Below, piece after piece: positions 14,127 through 50,630 of a DNA stretch of 50,630 bases (positions are counted from its first letter, which is position 1; each line of letters opens with the position of its first letter). Below the pieces are notes generated by a model. It saw nothing but the letters and a program-made list of their open reading frames with translations. It was not told the DNA's origin and made no database searches. The stretch is taken from assembly GCA_002104905.1 (NCBI GenBank), contig MCFE01000641.1:1-50630 (forward strand), in the 5' to 3' direction. The stretch is from Basidiobolus meristosporus CBS 931.73. Lineage: Eukaryota > Fungi > Basidiobolomycota. The translations under genes were made by a program, and so were the position numbers.

Positions 14127-14169
14127 CTCGAATGTTCCATAAACAACCAGGGGATGAGTGGGGAGAGAA

Positions 14170-14709: not shown

Positions 14710-14750
14710 GTGAGTGTGAGTGTGAGTGTGAGAGTGAGGGTGAGAGTGAG
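14710..14750. repeat. (GAGTGT)n-like hexamer microsatellite
   Basis: gagtgtgagtgtgagtgtgagagtgagggtgagagtgag. Confidence 0.8.
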
Positions 14751-32262: not shown

Positions 32263-32474
32263 CCTAGAACATGAAATTAGATAAGCTGTCCAAACAGCCG
32301 CAAACTTTACACACATGCTCTTGGGACCTTCCTAAGCCTATTCTATGTGTTTTTTATGCCAGAACTATGTAAAAGTATAACTACTACTTTTACTTTCAAT
32401 AAATCATTAAGTGAAAGCCACATTATCTCCTTGTTCTCCCTATCACTTCCAATATCTCAAAGCTTCTTACAACA
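32263..32474 (+). repeat. Diverged partial LTR of the copia family
   Basis: Homologous to the 3' two-thirds of LTR 3631-3979; ends CTTACAACA. Confidence 0.8.
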
Positions 32475-32573
32475 TATAGTATACAGGCTTTGGACTACTA
32501 ATCCCTCATTGACTGGATGTGCTATGCTCTTATAAATATTCCAGAACCTACTTGGAGTTTTTTAGCTCATTTT

Positions 32574-32922
32574 TGTTGTAAAAGTTTGTAATTCCACCTA
32601 GATATTCACCTAACTTAGTCACTTGGATCATTACCTTCAAATTCTAGAGAATACTGACCAAATACCTTGTTAGGATTTACTTAGAATATTTTCACCAAAA
32701 CATCAGGTGCCCAGAACATGAAAACTCTCAAAGTTGTCCAAACAGCCCCAAGCTTTGCACACATGATCTTGGGACCTTCCTTAACTTATTCTATGCGGTT
32801 TTAATGCCAAGACCAGGTAAAAGTATAAATACTACTTTTACATTCAATAAATCATTAGGTGAAAGCCACATAATCTACTTGTTCTCCCAAACACTTCCAA
32901 TATCTCCAAAACTCTTACAACA
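32574..32922 (+). repeat. Solo LTR
   Basis: TGTTG...CAACA, 349 bp, no PBS or PPT adjacent; flanks ATTTT/GTTTT. Confidence 0.88.
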
Positions 32923-32929
32923 GTTTTGA

Positions 32930-35900
32930 TGTTGCAAAAAGTTGCAATTCCACCTAAATACTCACCTAAGTTAGTCACTTAGATTACAGTCAACAAATCT
33001 TAGATAATACTCACCAAACTTCTTGTTGGAATTTACTTTGGTTAATTTTAACCAAATACCAGGTACCAATAGCATGAACACTTGTTAAGTTGTCCAAACC
33101 AACCCAAATGCTGCACACATATTCTTGGAATATCCTGGAGCCTATTATATGTGTTGGGTTTGCCAAGACTATGTAAAAGTACATGTACTACTCTTACATT
33201 CAATAAGTCATTAAGCAAAGCCCATGTTATCAACTCTTTCTCCCAATCACTTCCAATATCTTCAATATTCTTGTAACAGGTTATGAGCCCTAAGCTATCA
33301 TTCTTGGCAATATCCACTATGGCTAGTGCTGCAATTTTTCCATCTACTAAAAAGTTGAATGAATCCAACTACCAATTCTGAGAGGTGAGAATGAAGAAGC
33401 TGCTACAGGAAAGAGGCCTTTGGGATATTGTCATGGGAGAAGAATGCCCTCCAAGAATGTTGGAGATGGAGCCCTAAAGTATCAGAAGAAAGAACTAAGT
33501 ACCTTTTGCTGCAATGGCTTTGATGTCAAAGACAAACTGCTAATTCAATGCACAAGAGCAAAATGACAAGGAACGCCTGCAAGGTATTAGAAGAAACCTA
33601 CCAGTCATACATAGCTGCTCAGAAATTGTATCTTATGCAAAAGTTCTGTCCAAAAAAGATGCTGCCAGGAGAAGCATTGAAAGTATAATTAACAGACTCA
33701 CCTTGTGTGTTGATCAGATGGAATCTGTGAGTGTACCAAATACTAATGAAGATGTAATAGTCACCATCCTGAATAGTCTGACCAACAGGTTTCAGGGCCT
33801 TGTATAAACTTTAGAGTCCAGAACTGAGGATTTGACCTTAAACCTCATATATGGAAGGTGCCTGGATGAAACAACAAGAAAATCAAGAGGCAATAAGAAG
33901 GAAGAAGCAAATGCTTTAGTAAGCAGTAATAACCAACAGAGAATGTATTAAAGATCCTCTAAAGGCAACAGCAAGCTGTTTTGCAACTACTGCAAAAGGA
34001 AAGGACACACATTAGATGTGTTTCTCAAAAAGAGAGATAGATGGCAGAAAAAGCCTGAAAATGAAAATGCTAAAACAACAGAAGATATACTATTCTAATC
34101 TGCACAGAATATCACCACAATCAAGGATTTTCAGACGTAGTGGGATAAAGCAAGAAACTACAGCAGCATACTCCCTAAAGCAAAATGGAGTGTCTGAATA
34201 TGCAAGCAGATCAATAACTGATATGGCAAGATCCATGATCTGTGATCAAAAGTTATCCTACAAATTGTGAATGGAATCAGTTGCTACCATTATACCTCTC
34301 AGAAATAGGAGTCTTTGCAGAATGCTGTGTGCATTTACACCATCTGAGGCATGGTAACAATATTGACCAAGTGCAGAACACCTAGCAATATTTAGGTGGA
34401 CAGCATATGTCATAAAACTGTTTGGACATCAGTCAAAATTGGAGCCAAAAAGTATAAATGCACAATATTGGGTTACTGCATTGAGAGTAAGGCATACAGA
34501 CTCAACAATACCAAAGCAAAGAAGCAGCCCAAGCTCAGGGATATGTAGTTTGATGAAAATTTAAATTTTCACAAGAAATGAAATAAGATAACTACAATTA
34601 TTATATCTCAGGTCCACCAATAGTCAGGATTGACTCAGTACAAGTAGCGAAAGCTTTTTTACTGCAGAGGATTATACCCATATGGTTCAGCCTGAATCAT
34701 TGTTTAGGAATATCCCAGAAGTGCTCATTCAAGTATATTAGGAAGGGAATCCAACAAGACCACTAATAGCATAAGTTGCTATGTAAATGAAGGTTCAAAC
34801 TTAGTATATGCCTATGCAGTCCATATTGGTGCACCCAGACTGTAAAAGAGACCTAAAATAGCCCATAGATAAAGTTCTGGCTATCTGGAATAGCTGAGGA
34901 GTGTCACACCTAGATGGAAAACCAAACTCAGAACTTGGTTAAGTTACCGATCAACCAAAATCAATTGAATGCCAATGGGACTGCAAGATAAGATACAAGT
35001 CTGAAGGTAAAACAAAAAGATTTGAAGCCAGACTTGTGGCTATAGGAAACTCTCAGGCAAAAGGACCTGATTGTACTGAAACCTATTCACTTGTAGCTAA
35101 GTTTTATTCCATTAGACTCATATTGGCTAGCGTAGCTGAATATAGGTTTTATATTTGTCCAATGGATATGAAACAGCATTTTTAAATGAAAGAGCTGATG
35201 AGGATGTGTGTAGCAGCTAGTCTAATGGGTTTGCCAACCAACATAACCCCCATTTGGTCTGCAGGATATGAAATACATATATGGTCCCAAACAAATAACA
35301 AGAGCCTGGAATTGCAGGATAGAATCTTACTCAGAATCATTGAGGTTTCACAGGAGTACTGTGGACCATGTTATCCACTGCAAGCCAGATAGAGCAAATC
35401 CAGCTACATTAGCTCTATATATGCATGAACTTTTTATAGCCAGCAATAGTCATGAAGCCCTAGAAGAGACTAAATCCAGCCTATCTAAGGAGTTCAAGAT
35501 GTCCAATCTTATAGAACTCAGTAACTACTCAGGAATAAAGTGCACCATAGAAAAAAGTACCCAGACTATTACCCTGAGCCAGTCCAAGTATATTCATGAT
35601 ATACTTAAGAAGTACAAAATAGAATACAGTAATCTGGTGGCTACCCTAAAGCAGACAAACCTTGACTTGGTCAAAACTAAACTAAATTAAGAGAGCTTAG
35701 TGCCATTTGAAAGCCCAGAACTCCTTTACCAAGCTATAGTCAGCAGTCTGATGTACATAATGCTTGGATAATGTTCAAATATCTCATATTCAGTGGGAGT
35801 TGTCAGCTGCTATAATCAGAGCTATAGATCTGATCATGTTGCCAAAGTTAGGCAGGCTTTTAGATACCTAGTAGAAACTGCTGATATCTGCTTAAGGAAC

Positions 35901-36755
35901 ACCTTTAAGGAATCAGATCAGAATCTTGTGGGATACTCAGATGCTGAGTTAGGACAAGTATTTGTAGACAGAAGAGACAAAACTGATTACACCTTGTTTT
36001 AATGCAAAGGATCAATTTGATGGAATTCAAGAAAGGAAACAGCTGTAGTACTTTTGAACACAGAAGTAGAGTATATGGCCATCTATAAAAATATAAAAGA
36101 AGCAGTGTGATTAAGAAAGCTTTGGAAAGATAGAGGCTAATGTCAAGAAGTGCTTATAACTTTATTTCAAGATAATCAAGGATGCATATGATCAGGTTAA
36201 AATTCAACTTTTAATACAAGAGCTAAGCACACAGATATTAGACATTGTTTCTTACTTAAACCTTTAGAGAGTAATGTTGACCACTAAGCTTACTGTCTTA
36301 CAGATGAAATGACTGCAGATATATTTACCAAATCATTACCACAAGACAAATTTGAATATTTTAAGTTACAATATGAACTAGTCAGTAAAACATTGAGTTC
36401 AGTGGGATTGTTAGAAAATTTTGCAAATCCACCCAGATACTTGCCTAACTTAGTTGCTTAGATCACTACCTACAGATCTTAGAGAAAACTCACCAAATTC
36501 CTTGTTGGGATTGACCTTAAATATTTTAACCTAAATAGCAGGTATTCACAACAAGAAAATCCATAGAGTTGTCCAAACAGCCCCAAGCCTTGCACACAAG
36601 CTCTGGGGACCTTCCTAAGTATTTGGAGGGCTTGTTATGCCAAGACCATGCAAATGTACAAATACTGCTCTTACATTGAATAAACCATCATATGAAAATA
36701 ACAATATCTACTTCTTCTACCAATTACTTCCCAGATCACCAAGACTCTTACAACA
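32930..36755 (+). mobile_element. Old, heavily decayed copia element (copia-3) with both LTRs
   Basis: LTRs 32930-33278 and 36409-36755; PBS 33279-33290; gag/IN/RT/RH remnants with many stops; flanks TTTGA/TGTGA. Confidence 0.9.
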
Positions 36756-38548
36756 TGTGATGTCATTAGGAACTCTGCTGATTTCTAGTACCTTCTAGAA
36801 CTTGCATACAAGTATGTACTTGGCAATCAGGATTTGTATTTAAGTAGAGTCAATTGCACATCAACATATCATCCTATATATCATTGAGCCTCACTCCTTA
36901 TTGATTAGCAGTTGATCACTGCACCAACCTTTAGCTATTACACTTAAGACTTACTAATGAGTAGTTTTCAGGAAAGTGTAAAGGACACAAAGAGACCTTT
37001 GGAGACACCTGGAGCACCTAGGAAGCTGGGGAAACAGGATCTCCTACCATAGTGATAGATTGAGAGTCACCAGCAGTTTAGACCCTGAGGTTATGGGACC
37101 CATTGGACAACTTAAAGCACCTTGAGTTGTGTAGCTTCTCTGAGTAGTATGTTTAAAACAACACCCCACTTAATTCATATTGACACCTTCCTTGTTCCTT
37201 TGGTGTTGGTGATATTGGTGAAAAGGCTTTTGACAATGACTCTGACCAGATGTTTTGTGCAAAGTTGCTGTTAGTTTAACTTTTCAATACCAAAAGAAAT
37301 TGCTGTACAGTACAAAGTATCTGATTGCTACTGTTGCAAAGGGATTGGAGGTAAAGCACAACCCTTCTTGATATACCATAAATCATTCACCAGGAAGCAG
37401 GCGTGTAGGGTGCCCTTTGATATTGCCTGTGAGTCTTTGGTAGTATGTACAGATATGGAATGATCCATATGAGCTACTTAACCAGCCCACAAGTTTCCTG
37501 CTGAGGGTCAAAGCCATCTTGATAACTTTTCATAAAAGCAAGACTGGGTTGCATGTTATGAAGAATGTATTGAAGAGTGTCTTTGTAGCTGCTTCATATA
37601 ACACAGCTCCCTTGTCCAAGATACTTGGGAAAACTCTTGTATATGTCCAGTGAGTTGAGTACCTGAAAGCAACAGAGTCAGAGTCAAGTGTGGCAATAGA
37701 GAGTACGCCATTACTGCAATATCTCAAAACAAATATTGCATTTATTAGTTTATTTTGCCTTTGCTCCTACAACACATATATGAAAGCTTAGTAATTTTCA
37801 ACTTTGAAGGACAAAACCTCAAGGTCTTGACTATCAGTCCAATAAAGACTAGTATTCCCTGCAGAATGCTCAGTGAACAGTACATGTCTCAAAAACCAGC
37901 CTATTTGAGGCAGTATTCAAGGAGTTATGATCAATAAAGTACAATGAGCAAATTCATTAGCCCCCCTTACTAGGTTGCCCTGGTGACTTCAATTGCATCA
38001 AATTTTTGATTTAGCCATTCAAGTGATATGAGATTCCCACAGGTGCTGCATCTATGTTCAGTCTGTGTTACTGCAAAGGTTAGCATAGTATTTTATGTGT
38101 TGCTTGTACAATAGTCCAAAAACTCTTGTACTTTGGAAACTTCTTCTATATGACTTATCCAGGGGAAAAATAAAAGACAGCCTCTCTTACTAAAATCTCT
38201 GCACTACAATTGAAGTTCAAAGGTTTAAGACTCTTGCCTGCATTACTTACACTGTTGAGTGTCTGGATGTTGATCAGTGCTATGCCAGTAAAGAGACTCC
38301 TCAGCTCACATCATCAAATATAGGCATTACACTTAGAGAGTAGGTGTTATACTAAGGGCTAGAAAAAGGTTAGAAGAGCAGGGGGTCAGGGGGATGCAGT
38401 CCTCTAGAGAAAAAAAGCAGGGGGTTTTGGGGATGCAATCCACCATACTGCTCCCATACACTTTAAATTCCCTCTGGGTTACAATTCCTCCTCCTAGCAC
38501 TTATCACCCATACCACAAATATTTGTACCCTACAATTGGCACATTGTC

Positions 38549-39521
38549 TTAGGGGGAGGAAAAGTCACCAAGGTAGGTGAAATCTTTATTTGATTTCAGA
38601 CAAGTTTAACTACAAATAAAGAAGCCAGCTGGGAATGAAGATTCCCAAAGTAAACACCAAGTTGAATATGAATAAATCTGAGCTAAAGTTTAGACAGTAT
38701 CCCAGAGTACACTGGAGTTCGGGTTCATGGGGGAGTGAAGCAGATAAGCTTGAGAGATATAATAATCTGCTAAGAAGTGGGTAACAGCAGGTGAAGGGGA
38801 GTTTTTGATAAGTGAAGTGAATCCTGAGAGCAGAGATTCCTCTAATGAGAAGGTCTTGTAAACTGGAGAATCAGGAAACTCTTTAAAGGCATGGTCAGTA
38901 GGTTCCCAGTAAAACTGGTCAGAGACATTTTGAGAAAATTGCCGGGCAATACTTATGTCAAGCACTACCTCCAGAGTGTGATGGTTGATAAATCTCATGT
39001 TAACAATCTTAGACAAATTGTAACCTTGTTGCTTGAGATACATCCTATGCTCAGATATAGGAATAAACTCCACAGTTGGCAAAGTAGCAGACAGCCCAGT
39101 CAGTAGCAGGAAGTAAATCAGAAGTGGCAGGAAGCTTTCTTTCAGTCTTGGGAGGAGCAGCAGGATGTCTTGAGGAAGCAGGAACAGGCTTTTTGACAGC
39201 TTCAGAATTGGAAGAGTGAGCAGGCGCAGACAATTCTTGGGCAGTCTTGTTGACAGGCAAGAGTTGGCACAGGGACAATAAGTCTTGTAGATCAGAAAAG
39301 GCAGAAAAAAGCTTTTGAACTTGTTTCTTGAGTAAAGCATTTTCAGCTTCACCAAGTGCAAGCCTTTCCTCCAGGAAGGAAATCTGAAGGGAATGAAGTG
39401 AAGGAATAAGAAATAAGAAGAAGAGGGTAGTAAATGGTGGGTGGGTGAGAAAATTGGCAGGGAGAAGAGAAGGAAGAAGCAAAATGAAGATGAAGAACAG
39501 AGTGTTACTTGTGGTGCGCAT
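38549..39521 (-). mobile_element. Telomeric module 1: decayed ORF1/gag-like module with the shared 3' motif
   Basis: TTAGGGGG junction at 38549, shared motif to about 38628; homologous to 47723-48650 but with ATG>ATT, frameshifts and an early stop. Confidence 0.88.
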
Positions 39522-39816
39522 CCAGATGCAGATATTGTAGATAGTATCAGTGAATCACACTCATCAATTATTTCATGTAAAAGGCCACAATTAACAGCCC
39601 CACCTACAGAAATACCAGTTTTGGGTACATCAATGCCATCATTGCCGCCACCACCACCACCGCCATTATTAATGTCTTGAAGAAGTCAGATAAATAAAAT
39701 CAATGATTCTTTTTTGTATTATGCAGAGTTTAATTGATATATTAATAAAGCATGCATAGTGCATTATCTACTTGCCTAATATTTAACTAGCCAGTTGTAG
39801 ACTATAACAGATAGAC

Positions 39817-42570
39817 TTGAGGCAAGCCACAAAGATAGTTACTCTGCTCATCATGACAACAATAGATATGACAACCGGAGAAAATGATTACAAACTGTAT
39901 CAACAATGTCTTGGTTTATATCTGGCAGGAGTAATATCTGTTACTAGGCGCAGTTATTCTTCAGTGACAGTCACACCATCACTAAGAGACATATTTTTAT
40001 ATGGTGGATATCTTGTGGAGCACTTGAGAGATTTATCATTGGAGGGACACCATAGTAATAGTGGTAGGAGAGGTACCAGTGCTGGTAGCCAAAATTTCTC
40101 TCTAACAGGAATTCTTGGCTAACTTAACTCTGGCATTTTGAGAATTAGAATGACTGATATTTGGAATACTGAAGATACTAGAACCAGTACCTTCAATGGA
40201 CAGCAAGATAGTCAGCCTATTTTTTCTACAGGATACTATTACTAGAATTAGAGTCACAGGAAGACTTCTTCTTAGTAATATTTGCGCAGGTGATCATAAG
40301 AATCTTTATGTATTTGGTGGTTTGAGGTAGAGAACAAAATTTCCAACCCAACAACTAACAAAAGTGGAGATGGAGAAATTATTGAAGCTGCAGCAACTAT
40401 TCATTGTAAAGATAATTTCAATTGTATGGATCCAAGTAAGCTACAAGTTATTTGTTACACAGATGCTGATCAGAAGTGGAGAATGTGTAGTAGTAGTACC
40501 CTTCAAACTAAACCATTCATGGGGAACCCCAAAAACATGCCAACCCAACAAGCCTGGGCAACTCTAACATATGCATACAGTTGCTTATTTCTACTTGGTG
40601 GATATGCCATTTCCAACACAGAAATACCTATATTCCCTCCAGAGGATACCCCCTTTTTAAATGAGTTTTATTGCTTGAGGCTACGCACTGGGACTTGGGA
40701 GAAGCTCTATATTCACTCTACAATTCAGAAGGAGTTACTAGGGAATGCTATTTTGGTTGTCAATGAATCTGCAAATCTAATTCATTACATGAACAAGGAA
40801 AACGTTGCTTTTACATATGACATTGATATTAGAATATGGATTTATCCACCTGACCCAGCACAGCATATTAGTACTAAGCAACTTCTGGGACAAATACTCA
40901 ATGAGTCAGCTGGAGTACCACTCACAAGTATGGATGGAAGAAACAATAATTTACTTAGACAGAGTGCTGAGACTCTCAAAGTTCCTCTTAAGAATCATCA
41001 AATCTTTGGTGTGCATTGGCTTAAATACACAGAAGTACTTCATAATGGAGCATTGCTTGCAGATTCCATGGGGTTGGGGAAAACTCAAGAGATATTGAGC
41101 TTGATTGTGGAAACACCTATGCAACAACCAAATCTCATTATTGTTTCATTATCATAACTATTGAATTGGCCAGAAGAAATCAAGAGCAAAACACAAATAT
41201 CAATGCATGAGATACATGTGTTCCATGGGAAATATCAAGCCATACACATGGTTGATATAAAGGCCAAATGGATTGTCCTCACTACCTATCATATGCTTTG
41301 TGTAGAAGCAAAGAACTCTGGATCACCTATCTGGAAGGTGGAATTTGGTCAGGTAGTAGCTGATGAAGCAGTTATACTGAAGAACTATTCTGGTGGAAGC
41401 ATAAATGCAATAGCCAAGGTGAACGGAAAGTCCTTAATTCTTATCACCATGACTCCTTTTCAAAATGATCTTATTGATTTATACTTGTACTTTATTCTCT
41501 TTGGTCAATGGGAAGGCACTCCAAAGGATTTGCAACAACTATTGAATGAGGAGAATAATGCTAATTGGCTTGTTAACTGGCTGGTGAAAAGATTAGGCCA
41601 TATAGTTTTGAGACAAGTACCCGAGTCTCAACTTTTGGAGAGAGAGCAGTACAAATGACTGATATACAAGAGCAGATTATTCTGTGTCAATTATCCATGG
41701 AAGAACAAAAGAAATATACTGAGCTACTAGCAGAGCTGCCAAATGACATTAGTAAGATGGGAGCTAATACATATTTGTGCCTATTTTCATATCACCCATT
41801 CATGTATACCTGGAGCAGAGAGAAGAATATTAGTTTGCAACAAATAAACACTATTGATGGGGAAGAGGATGATGTAGAAGCTGTTTCTGCTGGTATTCTT
41901 CATCAGAGAGTACATTACTAGGTAGCAGAGAAGAAGAAGAAGAAGAAGCAGTAGAGTGTACATCTTATTCTAACCCCTCTTCATTGTTGCCCAAAATGAC
42001 TCCTGAGCAAGTGGAAATAGATCACGCCATTGATAACAATAATGCCACTCCCAATGATGGCATACTTGTAACAGACACCCAGCAAAGAGGCAATACCACA
42101 GAGGGGTTAGATTTGGAACAAGTCTTAATGGAGGATTTTATTTCTGATGTTGAGAATAACACAGTTAACAAACATAGTGCAAAGACACAGCAATTGATTG
42201 ATATTCTGCAAAAGGAGATATTTGCTAATGGGAGCACAATTAGGTTGTCATATTTTCCTCTTTTAATCTGATGCTTGATTTAATTGCATATCATTTGAAG
42301 AGAAATTCAATCACTTTCCTTACTAAAACCAGATCTACTCCAGTGCAAGCTTAGAAATGCAATCTCAAACAATTTGTACTACCAGTTCCAGAGAATGAAA
42401 TCTGGGTCTTATTAATGAACCTTAAATGTGGTGCCTTTGGGTTGAATTTACAGATGGTGTCAGTGATGATCTTCACTGACAACTGGTGGAATCTGTTTGT
42501 TGAAGCCCACGCAAAAGCTTGTGTACAGAGAGTGAATTAGCCAAAGAATATAGTCAGTGACCAGCTGATA
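39817..42570 (+). pseudogene. Kelch-repeat + SNF2-family helicase pseudogene inside the subtelomeric array
   Basis: Kelch-like RSYSS..IFLYGG, LYVFGG (40304), LFLLGGY...WEKL; SNF2 GALLADSMGLGKT, IVLTTY, VVADEA, TPFQNDL; HELICc GAFGLNL...DNWWN (42400-42540); in-frame stops at 41155 and 42538 plus frameshifts. Confidence 0.8.
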
Positions 42571-42671
42571 ATGCAGGATTTGTTTGAATCCCAAGGACTT
42601 ATTGACAGTCAAACCCAAAAGCTTGACTTATTGACTAGAATGACCTGTACATGTGTTGATGAATATTCCAC

Positions 42672-44244
42672 TTAGGGTTAGGGGGGGAGACATTCACCAA
42701 CAGGTGAAAATCTTTATTTCAGTTGAAACAAAGAAGCCAGCGCTACTGTTGTAGCTTTGATACAAGAGTGTGTAGCTGAGGGGAATTTGTTGGTAAGTTA
42801 ATAAGAAGTGATGATAGTTCTTCAGTGGTCAAGACACTGTTCAGTGGGAAGGGGGGTAGCAAGAGAGGTAAGAATGACTTGTGAACAACATTAATGAGGG
42901 GAATGTGATAAGGATTGATATTCATCATAAAGGGTGTGTGCTGCTGCAGATATTGCTGCCAAAGGTCTGTCAAGTACCTCAGGTAGGCCAGCTTGGGTTT
43001 TTCTGACTGCAGAATAAGTTCAGCAAACTTCTTGACTTCAGGATCTCCAAGTATAGTTCTCCAGCAGGAGTCAGGTGTAGTGTGGTGTGTTCTCTTCCAT
43101 GCCTTAATCAGTGGGTTGTTGCAGTTGTGAAGTCTGAGGTATAATCTGGTTCTAAGGTAGAGAAGTCTGATCTTATAGGGCATAAACCCAAAAGCACCAA
43201 GAATAGCATGTCTGTAGGGGCATTCAGGCAAATCAGGCACCAAGGAGGTAATGCACCATACTGAAAACTTGTCAAGCTTAGTGCAGTCTCTAGAAGTAAG
43301 AGAGAGAAGTGGTAAGCCAAATTCCAGGACAGGGAAGACAAACTGCTTGAGTAGAAGGAGGCAGCTGGGAGCTGAAGTTGTAGGAGGAGTAACAACCAGT
43401 AGCTTGTGGAGTGCCTGTCTTGCCAGGATAATTCTCTTCTTCAGGTGTGCTCCAGAGTCTAGTCCAGTAGGAAGGAAAGGAAAGCCAAGATATGTAGCAG
43501 AAACCTGAGCAGGTAGAGTGGAGTTCTCCAAGTTGATGGGAGAGCCCAAAGGTACTGTCTTTGCAATGGAAAGCTGGAGATTATTCTTCTGCAGATACTG
43601 GTGGATGGTCTGGGAGTCTTGTTGCACATTGGAGGAGGATATTCTGATGTCATCAGCAAAGAGAGTAACCAGGCAGTCAGCTGAGAGTCTTGGGAAATCA
43701 TTCAGGAAGATGGCAAACAGTATAGGACCAAGCACAGAGCCTTGAACCACTCCATTAGGAACTGAGAACACAGCTGATTGCTCACTTGGGTGCAGAATTC
43801 TTGCTTGTGGATCCAGAAACAGAGACCTGACAAGGAGGGTGAGAGAGGTACTGGAGAAGCATTGCAACTTGGATCAAAGCAGATTTCTATCAACTGAATC
43901 AAAGGCCTTAGTAATATCAAACAGAACAGAGGGATACTTGCACTGGAGAAAGTGATCTTGGCTAAGTATGACTGCATATTCCAAGGAGAGGCCAGGAACA
44001 AAGCCAAACTGTGCAGGATGAAACTTGAGGGAGTCGGAGTAGAGCTCCTGAGCAAGCAGAAGCTCAAACACCTTTCTGCAGGTGGGCAGCAGAGATATTG
44101 GCCTGTAGGAGCTAGGATCCAGGTGCTTTCCTTTACCCTTGTACAGTGGCAGAACATTTGCAAAGGACCATTGCTCAGGAGTAGAAAGCTGGGCTGAACA
44201 TTGCTGAAACAGTAGAAGCAGAAGTGCAGACATGGCCTTGGTAC
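42672..44244 (-). mobile_element. Telomeric module 2: 5'-truncated RT-A non-LTR element with a TGG>TGA nonsense at 43874
   Basis: Near-identical to the 3' 1.55 kb of 45437-47669; TTAGGGTTAGGGGGGG junction at 42672; ends at GGTACT. Confidence 0.93.
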
Positions 44245-45436
44245 TTAGGGGAGGGAAAGTCACCAAGTTGGTGAAATCTTTATTTGGGTTAAGAACTAAT
44301 GTAGGTACAAATAAAGAAGCCAATTAAGAGGTCTAGAACCTCTCTAATAAGTAATCTAATTTATGTTTTGTTTCATCTCTAATGTTTGTTTCAATAAAGT
44401 AAAGCTTGTCAGGGGTAAATATAAAATACAGGGGTTTTGGGGGATGTACAAATTGTAGATGTTTCTGATCTATATAATCCAAGACTGGAACCCAGCCTGG
44501 GATTAGGTGTAGTAGGAAAGGTGTGTGGACTTGTAAGTAGCGCTGCCACATAGATCTTAGATGGTCCTGAGCCAGTAGTCTTGGTTTTTCAGCTTTTTGA
44601 AGTTTTGAAGCAAGCTCTGTTACTACAGCAGAGCCAACCAGGGTGTGCCAGCAAGAAGATTTCAGGGAAGAGTTAGATTGAAGCCATTGTTTGATGGAGG
44701 GGTTATGTGATTTCTGAAGTTTGACAAGGAAGGAAGCACGGAGATAGACCATTTGGATTTGGTATGGGTAGAAGCCAAAGGCTCCATTAGTTGAATGGAT
44801 ATAGGGAGATACTGGAAGATAAGGTACCAAGGATCTGATACACTGATGGAGATATTTATCCAGGTGGTGAAGTTCTCTGGAGGTTAGGGGTATAATGTGG
44901 AGACCAAATTCAAGTACCAGCAGTACATACTGCTTCAGAAGTATAGGGATCTTTTGAATTGGAGTGTCTGGAGTGACTACTACCAGAAGCTTTTTGAGAG
45001 CCTGCTGGGCAAGACGGATCCTATTATTCAGGTGGAGCTTTGAGTCAATCCCATGTTGACAAAATGGCAGACCTAGATATATTGCAGTTTGTTGTGGCAG
45101 AATGCTAGTGTTCTGTATAGTTGTAGTGCATCCAATTGGGACTGTCTTGGAAATTGAGAGAGAGAGGTTGTTGGCAGCCAAGTACTTCTCAATGATGGCA
45201 GTGTCTGCTATGGGATCAGGAGTAGCAATCTTGATATCATCCACATAGAGAGTTAGTAGTGGATAGGGAGAGTCTGGTGAGGGGCCTTTTGGAAATAAAG
45301 GAAAGTCATGTAGGAATATCACAAATAGTAAGGGACCTAGTACAGATCCTTGGACTACTCCATTTGGAACCTCATAAGTCTCTGGTGTACAACTTGGATG
45401 CAAAATTTTGGCTGAGTTCTCACAAAATAGAGAATG
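44245..45436 (-). mobile_element. Telomeric module 3: 5'-truncated RT-B (second RT subfamily)
   Basis: GVVQGSVLGP, LYVDD, YLG, GAFGFYPY; clearly diverged from RT-A; same 3' motif at 44245-44322; frame open to the stop at 44333. Confidence 0.92.
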
Positions 45437-47669
45437 TAGGGGGGGGGAGACAGTCACCAACAGGTGAAATCTTTATTTCTGTTGAAACAAAGAAGCCAGT
45501 GCTACTGTTGTAGCTTTGATACAAGAGTGTGTAGCTGAGGGGAATTTGTAGGTAAGTTAATAAGAAGTGATGATAGTTCTTCAGTGCTCAAGACACTGTT
45601 CAGTGGGAAGGGGGGTAGCAAGAGAGGTAAGAATGACTTGTGAACAACATTAATGAGGGGAATGTGATAAGGATTGATATTCATCATAAAGGGTGTGTGC
45701 TGCTGCAGATATTGCTGCCAAAGGTCTGTCAAGTACTTCAGGTAGGCCAGCTTGGGTTTTTCTGACTGCAGAATATAGTGAGCAAACCTCTTGACTTCAG
45801 GATCTCCAAGTATAGTTCTCCAGCAGGAGTCAGGTGTAGTGTGGTGTGTTCTCTTCCATGCCTTAATCAGTGGGTTGTTGCAGTTGTGAAGTCTGAGGTA
45901 TAATCTGGTTCTAAGGTAGAGAAGTCTGATCTTATAGGGCATAAACCCAAAAGCACCAAGAATAGCATGTCTGTAGGGGCATTCAGGCAAATGAGGCACC
46001 AAGGAGGTAATGCACCATACTGCAAACTTGTCAAGCTTAGTGCAGTCTCTAGAAGTAAGAGAGAGAAGTTGTAAGCCAAATTCCCGGACAGGGAAGACAA
46101 ACTGCTTGAGTAGAAGAAGGCAGCTGGGAGCTGAAGTTGTAGGAGGAGTAACAGCCAGTAGCTTGTGGAGTGCCTGTCTTGCCAGGATAATTCTCTTCTT
46201 CAGGTGTGCTCCAGAGTCTAGTCCAGTAGGAAGGAAAGGAAAGCCAAGATATGTAGCAGAAACCTGAGCAGGTAGAGTGGAGTTCTCCAAGTTGTTGGGA
46301 GAGCCCAAAGGTACTTTCTTTGCAATGGAAAGCTGGAGATTATTCTTCTGCAGATACTGGTGGATGGTCTGGGAGTCTTGTTGCACATTGGAGGAGGATA
46401 TTCTGATGTCATCAGCAAAGAGAGTAACCAGGCAGTCAGCTGAGAGTCTTGGGAAATCATTCAGGAAGATGGCAAACAGTATAGGACCAAGCACAGAGCC
46501 TTGAACCACTCCATTAGGAACTGAGAACACAGCTGATTGCTCACTTGGGTGCAGAATTCTTGCTTGTGGATCCAGAAACAGAGACCTGACAAGGAGGGTG
46601 AGAGAGGTACTGGAGAAGCATTGCAACTTGGACCAAAGCAGATTTCTATCAACTGAATCAAAGGCCTTAGTAATATCAAACAGAACAGAGGGATACTTGC
46701 ACTGGAGAGAGTGATCTTGGCTAAGTATGACTGCATATTCCAAGGAGAGGCCAGGAACAAAGCCAAACTGTGCAGGATGAAACTTGAGGGAGTCAGAGTA
46801 GAGCTCCTGAGCAAGCAGAAGCTCAAACACCTTTCTGCAGGTGGGCAGCAGACATATTGGCCTGTAGGAGCTAGGATCCAGGTGCTTTCCTTTACCCTTG
46901 TACAGTGGCAGAACATTTGCAAAGGACCATTCCTCAGGAGTAGAAAGCTGGGCTGAGCATTGCTGAAACAGTGGAAGCAGAAGTGCAGACATGGCCTTGG
47001 TACTAGTCTTCAGAAGCTCATAAGAGATTGTGTCCACACCTGGAGCAGTAGAGTTGGGAAGCCTCTTGAGCACATTATGGATTCTCCTTTGATCAAGTGC
47101 AAGTGGGATGGGCAGAGTCTTGAAGTCAGGATGAAAGCCAGGAGTTGAGTACTGCTTTGTAGAGAAGAAGATGTTAGCCAGCTGTTCTGTTGAAGGTAAC
47201 TTCCTGGAAGAGGGCCTCATTGCCCTGTAGAGTCTTGATACTGTTCTTGTTATAGAGTTGGAAGATTGCAGAGGCAAAGAACTCATAATATGATCCCAGA
47301 GCTGAGTATGCAGAGTGTGGTGAATTGCCTTGGAGTGGTGTATTGCTGTCAGGAGGAGTTTCTCTGTTTTTGGGTTAGGGAAACTCAGGTAGCTTTGTTG
47401 CAGGGCTGAAACAATGGATTCCCATTTTCTTGAGGTAACAGCAGTAGTCTTGCATGGTAGTGAAAGGGAGGCAGACACCAGAATCAGATGCTTCACAAAG
47501 AGCCAGGCATAGTTGAGATCATCTGGCAGAGAAAGTAGCAAACTGGCAAGCTTCAAGTTGTTCCCAAAGTCTTTCTTCTGATTCTTGGTAGCTTTGTGGG
47601 TGAGCACAGTAAGTTTTGGCAGCTTCCTCTTCACAACTGGTTGCATAGAAAGGGACCAGGCTGGGTGGG
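45437..47669 (-). mobile_element. Telomeric module 4: longest RT-A non-LTR element
   Basis: Shared motif 45437-45499, 714-aa ORF, capped by TGGGTGGGTTAGGGTTAGG. Confidence 0.95.
45502..47646 (-). CDS. LINE-type reverse transcriptase, 714 aa, no recognisable endonuclease or RNase H
   Basis: TAPGVDTI (domain 0), W..ANVLPLYKGKG, YRPICLL, QFGF, FDITKAFDSV, GVVQGSVLGP, LFADD, YLG; uninterrupted frame. Confidence 0.93.
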   Translation of the reverse strand: MQPVVKRKLPKLTVLTHKATKNQKKDFGNNLKLASLLLSLPDDLNYAWLFVKHLILVSASLSLPCKTTAVTSRKWESIVSALQQSYLSFPNPKTEKLLLTAIHHSKAIHHTLHTQLWDHIMSSLPLQSSNSITRTVSRLYRAMRPSSRKLPSTEQLANIFFSTKQYSTPGFHPDFKTLPIPLALDQRRIHNVLKRLPNSTAPGVDTISYELLKTSTKAMSALLLPLFQQCSAQLSTPEEWSFANVLPLYKGKGKHLDPSSYRPICLLPTCRKVFELLLAQELYSDSLKFHPAQFGFVPGLSLEYAVILSQDHSLQCKYPSVLFDITKAFDSVDRNLLWSKLQCFSSTSLTLLVRSLFLDPQARILHPSEQSAVFSVPNGVVQGSVLGPILFAIFLNDFPRLSADCLVTLFADDIRISSSNVQQDSQTIHQYLQKNNLQLSIAKKVPLGSPNNLENSTLPAQVSATYLGFPFLPTGLDSGAHLKKRIILARQALHKLLAVTPPTTSAPSCLLLLKQFVFPVREFGLQLLSLTSRDCTKLDKFAVWCITSLVPHLPECPYRHAILGAFGFMPYKIRLLYLRTRLYLRLHNCNNPLIKAWKRTHHTTPDSCWRTILGDPEVKRFAHYILQSEKPKLAYLKYLTDLWQQYLQQHTPFMMNINPYHIPLINVVHKSFLPLLLPPFPLNSVLSTEELSSLLINLPTNSPQLHTLVSKLQQ

Positions 47670-47722
47670 TTAGGGTTAGGGGGGATGATCATCACCAAAG
47701 GGTGAAATCTTTATTTAAATAA
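47670..47722 (-). mobile_element. Telomeric module 5: abortive mini-insert (about 50 bp) consisting only of part of the shared 3' motif
   Basis: TTAGGGTTAGGGGGG-ATGATCA-TCACCAAAGGGTGA-AATCTTTATTT-AAATAA, then TAGGGTTAGGG. Confidence 0.8.
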
Positions 47723-48650
47723 TAGGGTTAGGGAGGGAAAGTCACCAAAGTAGGTGAAATCTTTATTTGATTTCAGACAAGTCTAACTACAAATAAAGAA
47801 GCCAGCTGGGAATAGAAGATTCCCAAAGTAAATACTAAGTTGAATATGAATAAATCTAAGCTAAAGTTAAGGCAGTATCCCAGAGTACACTGGAGTTCAG
47901 GTTCATGGGGGAGTGAAGTAGATAAGCTTGAGAGATATAATAATCTTTTAAGAAGTGGGTAACAGCAGGTGAAGGGGAGTTTTTGATAAGTGAAGTGAAT
48001 CTTGAGATCAGAGATTCCTCTAATGAGAAGGTCTTGTAAACTGGAGAATCAGGAAACTCTTTGAAGGCATGGTCAGTAGGTTCGCAGTAAAACTGGTCAG
48101 AGACATTTTGAGAGAATTGTGTTGCAATACTTTTGTCAAGTACTACCTCCAGAGTGTGATGGTTGATAAATCTCATGTTAACAATCTTGGATAAGTTGTA
48201 ACCTTGTTGCTTGAGATACATCCTATGCTCAGATATAGGAATAAACTCCACATTGGCAAAGTAGCAGACAGCCCAATCAGTAGCAGGAGGCAAATCAGAA
48301 GTGGCAGGAAACTTTCTTTTAGTCTTGGGAGGAGCAGCAGGATGTCTTGAGGAAGCAGGAACAGACTTTTTGACAACTTCAGAGTAGGAAGAGTGAGCAG
48401 GAGCAGATGATTCTTGGGGAGTCTTGTTGGCAGGAAGAGTTGGCTCAGGGACAATAGATTCTTGCAGATCAGAGAAGGCAGAAAAGAGCTTTTGAACTTG
48501 TTTCTTGAGTAGAGCATTTTCAGCTTCAACAAGTGCAAGCCTTTCCTCAAGGAAAGAAATCTGAAGGGAATGGAGTGAAGGCATAAGAAATAAGAAGAAG
48601 CGGGTAAGATGGGGTGGGTGGGTGGGAAAATTAGCAGGGAGAAGAGAAGG
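47723..48650 (-). mobile_element. Telomeric module 6: ORF1/gag-like module with its own shared 3' motif
   Basis: Motif 47728-47803; truncated at GAAGAGAAGG relative to the longer copy (39461-39480). Confidence 0.9.
47856..48584 (-). CDS. ORF1-like (gag-like) nucleic-acid-binding protein, about 242 aa
   Basis: Coiled coil LEERLALVEAENALLKKQVQKL, SYSEVV motif, low-complexity linker, RRM-like YFANVEFIPISEHRMYLKQQGYNLSKIVNMRFINHHTLEVVLD. Resembles ORF1 of zygomycete LINEs (from memory). Confidence 0.65.
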   Translation of the reverse strand: MPSLHSLQISFLEERLALVEAENALLKKQVQKLFSAFSDLQESIVPEPTLPANKTPQESSAPAHSSYSEVVKKSVPASSRHPAAPPKTKRKFPATSDLPPATDWAVCYFANVEFIPISEHRMYLKQQGYNLSKIVNMRFINHHTLEVVLDKSIATQFSQNVSDQFYCEPTDHAFKEFPDSPVYKTFSLEESLISRFTSLIKNSPSPAVTHFLKDYYISQAYLLHSPMNLNSSVLWDTALTLA

Positions 48651-48904
48651 GTTAGGGGGGAGGAAAGTCACCAAGTGGTGAAATTTTTATTTACTTATGA
48701 CAAGTATCCAAAGAAGCCATGTTAATCTGAAGTAATTCCTAGAAAGCTAGGTCTGAGAGATATCTTCCTGGTAAGCCAGGTCTGAGAGTTGAGAAGCTGA
48801 GTGGTACTGTATTTCCTAGTTAGCTAGGTCTGAGAGAGGTTTCCTGGAAAGCCAGGCCTGAGAAGTGAGAATCTGAGTATATCTGAGGTGAGTTTTACTG
48901 ATTT
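48651..48904 (-). mobile_element. Telomeric module 7: 5'-truncated SINE-like unit (variant)
   Basis: First 250 bp of the 530-bp unit, with a diverged distal end. Confidence 0.88.
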
Positions 48905-49435
48905 GGTTAGGGGGAGGAAAGTCACCAAGTGGTGAAATCTTTATTTACTTATGACAAGTATCTAAAGAAGCCAAGTTAATCTGAAGTAATTCCTAGAAAG
49001 CTAGGTCTGAGAGATATCTTCCTGGTAAGCCAGGTCTGAGAGTTGAGAAGCTGAGTGGTACTATATTTCCTAGTTAGCTAGGTCTGAGAGAGGTTTCCTG
49101 GAAAGCCAGGCCTGAGAAGTGAGAATCTGAATATATCTGAGCTAAGTTATACTGGTTTGCGGTAGCTGAATTGTGGCCGGAATGGCCAGTAGACTGGGGG
49201 AACTGAGATGAATTTCTGGGCGATCACTGGCCAAATATACTAGGCAAATCTGGCCAATTAGCATTTCAAGGATTTCAGCCAATCAGAGCCTTTACTTTGC
49301 CCGATGGTTGATCAAGCCATCTCCCAATGAGCACACATCAATTTATTAATCAAATTTTGCTGGATCCAGGATTTGAACCCACCACCATGGGTATGGAAGG
49401 GTTAGGGATAACCACAAGGCTAAGTGTTCTTGGTT
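48905..49435 (-). mobile_element. Telomeric module 8: full-length tRNA-headed SINE-like unit
   Basis: A box 49422-49412, B box 49379-49369, non-coding body, shared 3' motif. Confidence 0.85.
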
Positions 49436-49980
49436 GGGTTAGGGTTAGGGTTAGGGGGGAGGAAAGTCACCAAGTGGTGAAATCTTTATTTACTTATGAC
49501 AAGTATCTAAAGAAGCCAAGTTAATCTGAAGTTATTCCTAGAAAGCTAGGTCTGAGAGATATCTTCCTGGTAAGCCAGGTCTGAGAGTTGAGAAGCTGAG
49601 TGGTACTATATTTCCTAGTTAGCTAGGTCTGAGAGAGGTTTCCTGGAAAGCCAGGCCTGAGAAGTGAGAATCTGAATATATCTGAGCTAAGTTATACTGG
49701 TTTGCGGTAGCTGAATTGTGGCCGGAATGGCCAGTAGACTGGGGGAACTGAGATGAATTTCTGGGCGATCACTGGCCAAATTTACTAGGCAAATCTGGCC
49801 AATTAGCATTTCAAGGATTTCAGCCAATCAGAGCCTTTACTTTGCCCGATGGTTGATCAAGCCATCTCCCAATGAGCACACATCAATTTATTAATCAAAT
49901 TTTTGCTGGATCCAGGATTTGAACCCACAACCATGAGTATGGAAGGGTTAGGGATAACCACAAGGCTAAGTGTTCTTGGT
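49436..49980 (-). mobile_element. Telomeric module 9: full-length tRNA-headed SINE-like unit preceded by three telomere repeats
   Basis: A box 49968-49958, B box 49925-49915; same 5' end as its neighbours. Confidence 0.85.
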
Positions 49981-50510
49981 GGGTTAGGGGGAGGAAAGTC
50001 ACCAAGTGGTGAAATCTTTATTTACTTATGACAAGCATCTAAAGAAGCCAAGTTAATCTGAAGTAATTCCTAGAAAGCTAGGTCTGAGAGATATCTTCCT
50101 GGTAAGCCAGGTCTGAGAGTTGAGAAGCTGAGTGGTACTATATTTCCTAGTTAGCTAGGTCTGAGAGAGGTTTCCTGGAAAGCCAGGCCTGAGAAGTGAG
50201 AATCTGAATATATCTGAGCTAAGTTATCATGGTTTGCGGTAGCTGAATTGTGGCCGGAATGGCCAGTAGACTGGGGGAACTGAGATGTATTTCTGGGCGA
50301 TCACTGGCCAAATTTACTAGGCAAATCTGGCCAATTAGCATTTCAAGGATTTCAGCCAATCAGAGCCTTTACTTTGCCCGATGGTTGATCAAGCCATCTC
50401 CCAATGAGCACACATCAATTTATTGATCAAATTTTGCTGGATCCAGGATTTGAACCCACAACCATGGGTATGGAAGGGTTAGGGATAACCACAAGGCTAA
50501 GTGTTCTTGG
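49981..50510 (-). mobile_element. Telomeric module 10: terminal full-length tRNA-headed SINE-like unit
   Basis: A box 50499-50489, B box 50456-50446; directly capped by the telomere. Confidence 0.85.
50446..50499 (-). promoter_or_regulatory. Internal RNA polymerase III (type 2) promoter: A box TAGCCTTGTGG and B box GGTTCAAATCC
   Basis: Matches to the A and B consensus at tRNA-like spacing (31 nt between GGTTA and TTC); repeated in three units. Confidence 0.75.
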
Positions 50511-50630
50511 TTAGGTTAGGGTTAGGGTTAGGGTTAGGGTTAGGGTTAGGGTTAGGGTTAGGGTTAGGGTTAGGGTTAGGGTTAGGGTTAGGGTTAGGGT
50601 TAGGGTTAGGGTTAGGGTTAGGGTTAGGTT
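50511..50630 (+). repeat. Telomere (TTAGGG)n, about 120 bp, G-strand running to the sequence end
   Basis: Perfect TTAGGG tract after one TTAGG variant; terminates the sequence. Confidence 0.98.

What the first reader, a model, noticed from the sequence alone, without database searches (positions are those of the whole stretch)
38549..50630. Modular telomere-extending retroelement system: RT, ORF1 and SINE modules chained onto the chromosome end
Seen: ten junctions (38549, 42672, 44245, 45437, 47670, 47723, 48651, 48905, 49436, 49981) each read (T)TAGGG-G(n) plus the same short motif, followed by four unrelated kinds of body. All are on the minus strand, several are 5'-truncated, none shows a TSD, and the last is capped by (TTAGGG)n. 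Established: this polarity is what results when the G-strand 3' OH primes cDNA on an RNA ending in CCCUAA, as for HeT-A/TART, MoTeR, Athena/Coprina and Terminons. Inference: here a LINE-type RT mobilises in trans a separate ORF1 RNA and a Pol III SINE through a shared 3' tag. I do not know of this combination being described.
Basis: partly seen in the sequence, partly recalled or inferred. Interest (0 to 1): 0.95.

Follow-up and report, generated by a model that had tools for sequence, protein, structure and literature searches.

The report
Retroelement arrays building fungal chromosome ends
The last 12 kb of this contig is a real, one-directional stack of retrotransposon copies from several families that all end in the same folded RNA tag plus one telomere-repeat unit, lying under a normal TTAGGG cap. 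The same stacks sit at hundreds of contig ends of what is probably the fungus Basidiobolus meristosporus, a Drosophila-like arrangement I found no description of for this group.

Summary
Ten junctions, all on one strand, read (T)TAGGG, a G-run and one shared motif, and the contig ends in about 19 TTAGGG repeats. Genome-wide the motif occurs 1,658 times, always near contig ends.

Five families share a about 60-nt 3' module: two hairpins, a pyrimidine tail, a C-run and UAA.
- Two are LINE lineages (B, C).
- Two are ORF1-only elements (A, E).
- One is a SINE-like element (D).

Three points need correcting.
- Full-length B copies do carry an APE-type endonuclease and an ORF1. The window copy is simply 5'-truncated.
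- One TTAGGG per junction is carried by the element itself. Only about half the junctions hold extra repeat, never more than 3 units, while terminal caps are 74-243 bp.
- The tRNA/Pol III origin of the SINE is unproven.

A telomerase (TERT) gene is present. Within arrays, distal copies look younger. Best reading: the elements are copied onto chromosome ends that have lost nearly all their repeats, and telomerase then re-caps the end. Endonuclease-dependent targeting is not excluded.

Other first-stage notes of this scan flagged the same arrays on other contigs of this genome. I found no paper describing them. This is a new variant of the known telomere-associated non-LTR systems.

The parts
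38335..38548 (+). Truncated start of the 'X' upstream part of a Y'-like subtelomeric SNF2 gene unit. It is cut off exactly where element A begins.
   Evidence: 77% identical to copies in L047, L042, L052 and L038, which all continue past this point. In other loci X starts right after TTAGGG repeats.
38549..39486 (-). A1: a full-length but older ORF1-only element, with a frameshifted ORF. Its 3' tag lies at 38549-38626.
   Evidence: Tag seen. Median identity to other A copies is 91.8%. The 5' end is defined against L034. Both flanks belong to the X-SNF2 unit.
39487..42671 (+). SNF2-family subtelomeric gene fragment, with its 5' part missing and in-frame stops. It is not a retroelement of the tag system.
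   Evidence: Pfam SNF2-rel_dom. The genome holds 2 copies at 92% identity and about 25 at 66-69%, all reading toward the telomere.
42672..44244 (-). B1: a 5'-truncated LINE (lineage B) covering the C-terminal half of the RT.
   Evidence: Pfam RVT_1 on window:42743-43867:-. Median identity to other B copies is 97.6%.
44245..45436 (-). C1: a 5'-truncated LINE of a second lineage (C), carrying the same 3' tag stems.
   Evidence: 46% protein identity to B ORF2, E 2e-87. Tag seen.
45437..47669 (-). B2: a 5'-truncated LINE with a 714-aa open RT frame at 45502-47646. It lacks the endonuclease domain and ORF1 that full-length copies have.
   Evidence: Full-length structure is seen in L033 (ORF1 254 aa, ORF2 917 aa).
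47670..47722 (-). E remnant: a 3' tag plus about 25 nt of an ORF1-only family E element.
   Evidence: The tag variant GATGATCA-TCACC-AAAG-GGTGA matches E units in L024 and L047, which encode a 285-aa ORF1-like protein.
47723..48650 (-). A2: an ORF1-only element missing about 13 nt at its 5' end. Its intact 242-aa ORF lies at 47856-48584 and has a coiled-coil N-terminus.
   Evidence: 34% identity and E 1e-20 to B ORF1. About 296 candidate copies at 96-100% identity in the genome.
48651..48904 (-). D1: a 5'-truncated SINE-like element.
48905..50515 (-). D2-D4: three full-length SINE-like elements of about 535 bp (48905-49435, 49436-49980, 49981-50515). They have no ORF, an A/B-box-like head, and the shared 3' tag.
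   Evidence: Copies are 97-98% identical to others. There is no tRNA match.
50516..50630 (+). Terminal telomere tract of about 19 TTAGGG units, running to the contig end.

Best explanation
This is a chromosome end of a telomerase-positive fungus, probably Basidiobolus meristosporus CBS 931.73. Its subtelomere is built by a consortium of non-LTR retroelements.

Who supplies what. Two LINE lineages (B and C) encode ORF1 plus an ORF2 with an APE-type endonuclease and a reverse transcriptase, and so supply the enzymes. At least two ORF1-only families (A, E) and one SINE-like family (D) have no RT. They carry the same about 60-nt 3' RNA module: hairpin 1 (which holds AAUAAA), hairpin 2 (UCACC-loop-GGUGA), a pyrimidine tail, a run of 4-10 C, then UAA. 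The inference is that the LINE RT recognises this module, as in 'stringent' LINE/SINE pairs. The inference also holds that the terminal C-run plus UAA, the complement of one telomere unit, pairs with the G-rich strand.

How a unit is added. cDNA is primed from the 3' end of the G-rich strand, so every unit lies with its 3' end toward the centromere. Additions happen at ends that carry only 0-3 telomere units, or at the eroded 5' end of the previous unit. They do not happen within or beyond a normal 74-243 bp cap. Telomerase then re-caps the new end.

What is shown and what is inferred.
- Shown: the anatomy, the polarity, the shared structured tag, the endonuclease fold, presence of TERT, the short seeds, the caps on truncated units, and the age gradient.
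- Inferred: tag recognition, trans-mobilisation, and end-priming.

My odds are about 0.85 for a telomere-end-specialised LINE consortium with tag-sharing dependants. They are about 0.5 for endonuclease-independent priming on repeat-depleted ends.
For: Location and copy number.
- The tag occurs 1,658 times, with 0 for the control, and the listed hits cluster at contig ends.
- No fetched locus holds tags in both orientations.
- Of the 62 best RT hits, 59 lie on the minus strand, at positions that track the inferred contig length.
- The right ends of C1, C21, C22, C23 and C970 are capped by TTAGGG tracts.

The shared tag.
- The module folds the same way in all five families.
- It recurs, followed by C-run + TAACCC, in relatives from 7 other samples. 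Two of those contigs also show head-to-tail units.
- Hairpin 1 shows compensatory changes at stem positions 2, 9 and 10.

Activity and coding capacity.
- B copies are 98-99% identical, 59 of 62 have no stop, and 36 of 62 have the 922-aa frame.
- The A ORF is homologous to B ORF1. E encodes an ORF1-like protein.

Junctions.
- Among 72 junctions, none carries more than 3 repeat units, and 25 carry only the element-borne TTAGGG or TAGGG after arbitrary sequence.
- Terminal tracts are 74-243 bp.
- Terminal tracts directly cap 5'-truncated A and B units and full-length SINEs.
- Distinct truncation-to-tag joints appear in short-read contigs at about the depth of the flanking low-copy DNA, which points to independent events.

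Order of addition.
- The distal unit is the younger one in 16 of 21 same-family pairs, and in 8 of 10 groups.

Telomerase.
- A TERT RNA-binding domain is found at C935.
Against: - ORF2 keeps an APE fold. The N, Y, GDxN, D and SDH motifs are conserved, and only Glu-to-Asp is changed. The domain is 43-55% identical among relatives, so it is under selection. A working endonuclease suggests nick-primed insertion.
- A1 (38549-39486) sits between two parts of one X-SNF2 unit with about 2.5 kb missing. That looks like an internal insertion with a target deletion, not a terminal addition.
- No RNA data exist for transcript ends.
- The age-gradient sample is small and its pairs are not independent.
- The organism is identified only by matching the assembly size.
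Confidence: 0.6

Rival explanations
1. TRAS/SART-like targeting. The APE endonuclease of ORF2 nicks the G-rich strand at TTAGGG, within telomeric or telomere-like sequence. Ordinary target-primed reverse transcription then inserts the element. Polarity would follow from strand-specific cleavage.
For: - The endonuclease fold is confirmed, and the TRAS1 endonuclease is the top PDB hit (E 1.1e-7).
- Most catalytic motifs are conserved across diverged relatives.
- The junction phase is constant (TTA then the G-run).
- A1 looks like an internal insertion.
Against: - Nicks placed at random in a 74-243 bp cap would leave long proximal tracts. None of 72 junctions has more than 3 units.
- In 25 of 72 junctions there is no chromosomal repeat on the primer side at all.
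- Most units are 5'-truncated, and terminal truncated units are directly capped. Bombyx TRAS/SART copies at telomeres are reported as full-length (PMC4700185).
- There is no poly(A).
- The catalytic Glu is replaced by Asp.
Confidence: 0.25
2. Template-jump concatemers. One priming event at an end is followed by the RT jumping from one RNA, at its 5' end or a broken point, to the 3' tag of the next. Several units would then be laid down at once, and most internal 'seeds' would simply be the RNA's own C-run + UAA.
For: - Full-length SINE 5' ends are often followed directly by the next unit, sharing only TT.
- Very small units of 18-95 nt occur, as does a triple 120-bp repeat in L012.
- About a third of junctions carry only one element-borne unit.
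Against: - About half the junctions carry extra GG/GGG or 1-2 more full units in front of the element-borne unit.
- An age gradient within arrays implies additions spread over time.
- It cannot be told apart from rapid successive end additions with the data in hand.
Confidence: 0.1
3. The arrays are mainly the product of recombination between subtelomeres (break-induced replication, unequal exchange) spreading a few old insertions, or they are an assembly artefact.
For: - The X-SNF2 unit is clearly spread among ends, and in other loci it is bounded by interstitial repeats.
- Tandem 120-bp units occur in L012.
- Contig orientation is oddly uniform.
Against: - Junctions differ from end to end.
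- Individual joints have about the depth of the flanking low-copy DNA in independent short-read contigs.
- There are hundreds of near-identical open frames.
- The same architecture is seen in contigs from 7 other samples.
Confidence: 0.04

Closest known systems
HeT-A / TART / TAHRE arrays of Drosophila telomeres
   Same: - Polar head-to-tail arrays at chromosome ends, with 3' ends toward the centromere.
- Many 5'-truncated units.
- A gag-only (ORF1-only) partner that must borrow an RT.
- RT-bearing members that still carry an APE domain.
   Different: - Here telomerase and TTAGGG caps are present.
- Junctions are C-run + TAA, not oligo(A).
- All families share a structured 3' tag.
- A SINE-like member takes part.
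- The host is an early-diverging fungus.
- Clade membership (Jockey) was not established.
TRAS / SART (R1 clade) of Bombyx mori
   Same: - APE-type LINEs with ORF1 + ORF2 associated with TTAGG(G) repeats.
- The 3' UTR is needed for recognition (PMC4700185).
- Orientation is as for TRAS.
- The TRAS1 endonuclease is the best structural match.
- They coexist with telomerase.
   Different: - There is no poly(A).
- Junction seeds are 3 units or fewer, rather than insertion inside long repeat tracts.
- Most copies are truncated.
- Non-autonomous partners share the tail.
- Sequence identity to insect LINEs is about 30% at most.
MoTeR, FoTeR and Cnl1 (fungal telomere-associated LINEs, CRE/SLACS clade)
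   Same: Fungal non-LTR elements lying in or next to TTAGGG telomeres, in genomes that also have telomere-linked helicase genes.
   Different: - Those carry a C-terminal restriction-enzyme-like endonuclease and form one clade (PMC12857005).
- These carry an N-terminal APE domain and no such motif.
Athena / Coprina endonuclease-deficient Penelope-like elements and Terminons
   Same: The RNA 3' end carries a telomere-repeat complement, and the elements stack at ends of telomerase-positive genomes (recalled, not tested here).
   Different: - The RT here is LINE-type, not Penelope/TERT-like.
- An endonuclease is present.
- Rfam found no hammerhead in 47600-50520.
Stringent LINE/SINE pairs sharing a 3' stem-loop (eel UnaL2/UnaSINE1 type)
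   Same: Unrelated bodies share a conserved, structured 3' tail with the autonomous LINE, and there is no dependence on poly(A) (recalled knowledge).
   Different: - Here the tail ends in a telomere-unit complement.
- All members are confined to chromosome ends.
- ORF1-only elements also use the tail.

Membership tests
Non-LTR (LINE) retrotransposon, APE type | Reverse transcriptase with LINE motifs | tested here: met
   Pfam RVT_1 at 4.5e-24 to 2.6e-25. The best solved relative is human L1 ORF2p at 5.8e-13. The YRPI and FADD motifs are visible.
Non-LTR (LINE) retrotransposon, APE type | N-terminal apurinic-endonuclease-like domain with catalytic residues | tested here: met
   Pfam hits are below threshold (Exo_endo_phos_2 at 5.9e-5). 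The AlphaFold model has pLDDT 80.7. Foldseek matches TRAS1 EN, APE1 and L1 EN at E about 1e-7. The N, Y, GDLN, D and SDH motifs are kept, and the Glu is replaced by Asp. Activity was not tested.
Non-LTR (LINE) retrotransposon, APE type | Target-site duplications flanking insertions | tested here: inconclusive
   None is visible. The flanks are other elements or repeats, and A1 shows a deletion instead.
Drosophila-type telomeric retrotransposon array | Polar head-to-tail array at the physical chromosome end | tested here: met
Drosophila-type telomeric retrotransposon array | Elements replace telomerase and form the terminal cap | tested here: not met
   A TERT RNA-binding domain is found.
TRAS/SART-type telomere-repeat-specific LINE | Insertion at a fixed position inside long telomeric repeat tracts, with repeats on both sides | tested here: not met
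   The primer side carries 0-3 units in 72 of 72 junctions. In 25 there is nothing beyond the element-borne unit.
TRAS/SART-type telomere-repeat-specific LINE | Poly(A) tail | tested here: not met
   All units end in C-run + TAA.
MoTeR/FoTeR/Cnl1 (CRE clade) | Restriction-enzyme-like endonuclease with CCHC motif C-terminal to the RT | tested here: not met
   Pfam finds no such domain, and the endonuclease is N-terminal and APE-type. The clade definition comes from PMC12857005.
Penelope-like elements (Athena/Coprina) | Penelope/TERT-like RT, hammerhead ribozymes | tested here: not met
   The RT is LINE-type. Rfam gave no ribozyme hit at E up to 1 in 47600-50520.
LINE/SINE partnership through a shared 3' tail | The same conserved structured 3' tail on the LINE and on non-autonomous elements | tested here: met
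   Five families and outside relatives share the two-hairpin module. Compensatory changes occur at 3 of 10 stem positions of hairpin 1.
LINE/SINE partnership through a shared 3' tail | SINE head derived from tRNA, 5S or 7SL with an internal Pol III promoter | tested here: inconclusive
   ARAGORN finds nothing. Rfam finds nothing at E up to 1 on 2.9 kb, nor at E up to 10 on 116 nt. A-box-like (10/11) and B-box-like (10/11) motifs 43 nt apart are seen by eye.
LINE/SINE partnership through a shared 3' tail | Demonstrated mobilisation in trans | not testable with these tools
   This needs a retrotransposition assay.

The most novel reading that the evidence does not exclude
An early-diverging fungus keeps telomerase but runs a second, retroelement-based way of rebuilding chromosome ends. 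At least five families (two APE-LINEs, two gag-only elements, one SINE-like element) share a structured 3' RNA tag that ends in a one-unit telomere complement. They are reverse-transcribed directly onto ends that have lost their repeats, at hundreds of chromosome ends. This would be a convergent, modular counterpart of the Drosophila system, and would include what may be the first chromosome-end-specific SINE.
Probability: 0.45. Interest if true: 0.85.

Novelty: new variant of a known kind. Interest (0 to 1): 0.72.

Why it matters
Telomere-associated retrotransposons are the main evidence for a link between retroelements and telomerase. The well-studied cases, however, either lack telomerase (Drosophila) or use sequence-specific cutting (Bombyx; the REL-type elements of fungi).

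Here a very active system of hundreds of open reading frames 98-99% identical coexists with telomerase. It uses an APE-type LINE, and it shows a whole set of dependants (gag-only and SINE-like) recruited through one RNA tag with a built-in telomere unit.

It would offer a culturable organism in which to test three things:
- how an RT chooses chromosome ends;
- whether end healing by retroelements backs up telomerase;
- how non-autonomous elements hijack a stringent LINE.

It also bears on the unusual karyotype and fragmented assembly of Basidiobolus. Nearly every contig sampled ends in such an array.

Tried and rejected
- **Ciliate-type genetic code.** In-frame TAA/TAG in the SNF2 segment suggested it. 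I dropped it because the 714-922 aa RT frames and other genes are open in the standard code.
- **Penelope-like (Athena) RT.** Rejected; the RT is LINE-type.
- **tRNA origin of the SINE.** ARAGORN and two Rfam searches found nothing.
- **Mis-assembly.** Rejected. Junction types are abundant in short-read contigs, and the architecture recurs in other samples.
- **Nested insertion of new units at the 3' junction of older ones.** Disfavoured by the distal-younger gradient.
- **Random endonuclease nicks in the cap, or priming from a full-length telomere.** Both rejected by the 3-unit ceiling on seeds.
- **RNA evidence.** No RNA run holds the sequence, so transcript ends, strand and promoter use are unknown.
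- **Short-read check of unique junctions.** The short-read contigs listed did not bridge the three unique junctions at 38549, 39486 and 42672.
- **Fetching more array sequence.** The 5' end of full-length B, a full-length C, and the complete list of tag positions were therefore not obtained.
- **LINE clade assignment.** Not possible, because the relatives found are unnamed.
- **Literature.** Five searches found no description of this system.

Full report

Yes. The + strand of 38549-50630 carries ten junctions of the form (T)TAGGG, a G-run, a short purine-rich linker, TCACC, 4-6 nt, then GGTGAAATCTTTATTT.
- The 16-nt core occurs 9 times at up to 2 mismatches, against 0.03 expected. The tenth copy has a 1-nt insertion.
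- All ten lie on the + strand and inside the last 12 kb.
- The contig ends in about 19 TTAGGG units.

In the whole assembly (89,489,060 bp, 1,366 contigs) the motif gives 1,524 forward and 134 reverse matches, and none for the reversed control. About nine in ten of the listed copies are preceded by TAGGG.

**2. Where are the copies?**

The listed hits lie near the right ends of contigs when forward and near the left ends when reverse.

Contig numbers turn out to follow the alphabetical order of size-ranked scaffold numbers. With that mapping, the 15 known contig lengths fall monotonically. The end coordinates of the 62 best RT hits track contig length, and 59 of them lie on the minus strand.

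The right ends of C1, C21, C22, C23 and C970 carry TTAGGG tracts of about 100-240 bp. A sixth locus, in C482, also runs out in a TTAGGG tract (74 bp held). The left ends I could read are not telomeric. No fetched locus has tags in both orientations. These are chromosome-end structures.

Independent short-read contigs from runs X1 and X2 hold many different joints from a truncated element to the next tag. Each joint has about the depth of the flanking low-copy DNA. The summed depth over B is thousands of times that of the flanks (the tool warns that depth is not copy number). Mis-assembly is not the explanation.

**3. What are the bodies?**

| Family | What it is | Evidence |
|---|---|---|
| B | LINE. 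The window copies are 5'-truncated. Of the 62 best genomic copies, scored out of 1,614 candidates, all are 98-99% identical, 59 have no stop and 36 have a 922-aa open frame. | |
| C | A second LINE lineage, 46% identical to B in protein. | |
| A | ORF1-only element. Its 242-aa ORF (coiled coil plus C-terminal domain) is homologous to B ORF1 (34% identity, E 1e-20). About 296 candidate copies, 96-100% identical. | |
| E | Encodes a similar 285-aa protein. | |
| D | A non-coding element of about 535 bp. | |

A full-length B copy (L033) has a 254-aa ORF1 and a 917-aa ORF2. The ORF2 N-terminus deserves detail:
- Its Pfam matches to the endonuclease families are below threshold.
- It aligns with APE-bearing LINEs. 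The N, Y..PP, GDLN, VDW and SDH motifs are conserved, and the catalytic Glu is replaced by Asp.
- It is predicted with pLDDT 80.7.
- It matches the TRAS1 endonuclease, AP endonucleases and the L1 endonuclease at E about 1e-7.

The RT is LINE-type. Human L1 ORF2p is the best solved relative, at 5.8e-13.

For D, ARAGORN and Rfam give no tRNA match, even on the 116-nt head alone. Only A-box-like and B-box-like motifs are seen. Its Pol III origin remains a guess.

**4. The shared tag**

On the sense strand all families end in the same module:
- GGCU;
- hairpin 1 (stem UCUUUAUUU / AAAUAAAGA, which contains AAUAAA, with a family-specific apex);
- hairpin 2 (UCACC, a loop, GGUGA);
- a pyrimidine-rich tail;
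- 4-10 C, then UAA.

Only five close protein relatives exist in the large database (48-80% identity, unnamed). The next hits are APE-LINEs at about 30% identity. Contigs encoding those relatives, from seven other samples, end in the same module followed by C-run + TAACCC. Two of them show further head-to-tail units.

Across these sequences, hairpin 1 keeps pairing through changes on both sides at stem positions 2, 9 and 10. Hairpin 2 is almost invariant. The tag is therefore a conserved, structured RNA element. It is the only thing that RT-less A, D and E share with the LINEs.

**5. What the junctions say**

I read 72 distinct junctions.

| Junction class | Count |
|---|---|
| Lone TTAGGG after a non-G base | 19 |
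| TAGGG only | 6 |
| TTAGGG preceded by G, GG or GGG | 30 |
| One or two extra full units | 11 |
| No clear unit | 6 |

No junction has more than three units.

- A lone unit after arbitrary sequence would be expected about once in 64 junctions by chance. One unit must therefore be part of the element (C-run + UAA).
- G-run length is family-typical: 4 in A and C, 5-6 in D, and 6 or more in B. This fits a templated run with slippage.
- Terminal caps are 74-243 bp. Nicks at random positions in a cap, or priming from the tip of a full-length telomere, would leave long proximal tracts. Neither is seen.
- Caps sit directly on a 159-nt stump of A (C22), on a short stump of B (C1), and on full-length SINEs (C970, C21). 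Element 5' ends really have been chromosome termini.
- Within arrays, the distal unit is closer to its family's other copies in 16 of 21 same-family pairs, and in 8 of 10 groups. In the window the figures are A1 91.8% versus A2 95.5%, B1 97.6% versus B2 98.2%, and D1 95.6% versus D2-D4 about 97.5%.

New units are therefore added distally, on ends that hold few or no repeats.

**6. Complications**

The stretch is not a pure retroelement stack.
- 39487-42671 is part of a subtelomeric SNF2-family gene. The genome holds 2 copies at 92% identity and about 25 at 66-69%, all reading toward the telomere.
- Its upstream part, 'X', starts right after interstitial TTAGGG in other loci. That is reminiscent of yeast Y' elements.
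- In the window, A1 lies between X position about 215 and the interior of the SNF2 gene. This is either an internal insertion with an approximately 2.5-kb deletion, or healing of a break followed by capture of another end.

This case, together with the conserved endonuclease, keeps an endonuclease-dependent route alive.

A further element family with a different 3' end exists (L040).

**7. Organism and telomerase**

The assembly size equals the 89.49 Mbp quoted for Basidiobolus meristosporus CBS 931.73. Gene content is fungal, with copia elements and RasGEF, and the look-alikes are from Mucoromycota. Runs under the same species label from 2013 lack the elements. The identification is an inference.

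A TERT RNA-binding domain is present at C935.

**8. Comparison and novelty**

| Known system | How this differs |
|---|---|
| Drosophila HeT-A/TART/TAHRE | Same polar arrays, truncation and gag-only partner. Here there is telomerase, a structured tag in place of oligo(A), and a SINE-like member. |
| Bombyx TRAS/SART | Same APE-LINE architecture and orientation, and coexistence with telomerase. Here there is no poly(A), no long flanking repeats, and few full-length copies. |
| Fungal MoTeR, FoTeR, Cnl1 | Those belong to the REL-endonuclease CRE clade. These do not. |

Five literature searches found no description of this system in Basidiobolus or other early-diverging fungi. Other first-stage notes of this scan flagged the same kind of array on other contigs of this genome.

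My verdict is a real and very active system. It is a new variant of the telomere-associated non-LTR kind, and the priming mechanism is still open.

Noticed in passing
window 38335-38548 and 39487-42671; L050:4518-10000; L047:5365-10000: A Y'-like subtelomeric unit: an upstream 'X' part followed by a gene with kelch-like and SNF2 helicase parts. It always reads toward the telomere. In other loci it starts right after interstitial TTAGGG. The genome holds 2 copies at 92% identity and about 25 at 66-69%. It may spread by recombination, like yeast Y' or the fungal telomere-linked helicases.
   Followed up: partly
whole genome: 92% of tags are on the forward strand. Nearly every contig sampled, from about 345 kb down to about 6 kb, has its array and telomere at the right end and a non-telomeric left end. 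I have no explanation for this uniform contig orientation. It also implies hundreds of distinct chromosome ends.
   Followed up: partly
L040:4282-5068: Another end-associated element family with a different 3' end: a hairpin UUGCAC-UUCU-GUGCAA, AAUAAA, then CCCUAA. Its 5' region carries about 90-bp tandem repeats with telomere-like motifs, directly capped by TTAGGG.
   Followed up: no
window 38370-38470 and homologues in L047, L042, L050: Conserved palindromes in the X element (for example AUGGGGGAU-GCA-AUCCCCCAU) just inside its telomere-proximal boundary. Their function is unknown.
   Followed up: no
window 30000-37150: A dense mosaic of other subtelomeric repeats shared with many ends at 70-97% identity. 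It includes a repeat of about 350 bp, in direct and inverted copies, at 31915-32262, 32574-32926 and 36409-36755.
   Followed up: no
window 44-3619 and 28017-29504: Copia-type LTR retrotransposon genes. The first has a 1,191-aa open gag-pol frame; the second is an RT fragment on the other strand.
   Followed up: no
window 6000-16000: A GC-rich island (50-59% GC, against about 38% around it). It holds a 724-aa RasGEF ORF and other long ORFs. A DUF3472 gene lies at 25466-26668.
   Followed up: no
runs X6-X8: Runs from 2013 under the same species label as the source hold none of these elements at 95% identity. A 2022 run of another organism holds one 258-nt piece of the B RT. The families may be strain- or species-restricted.
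   Followed up: no
L012 (C2:259994-260258): Three successive 120-bp units, each a B tag plus the same 95-nt stump. This is a tandem duplication, or repeated template switching at one point.
   Followed up: no
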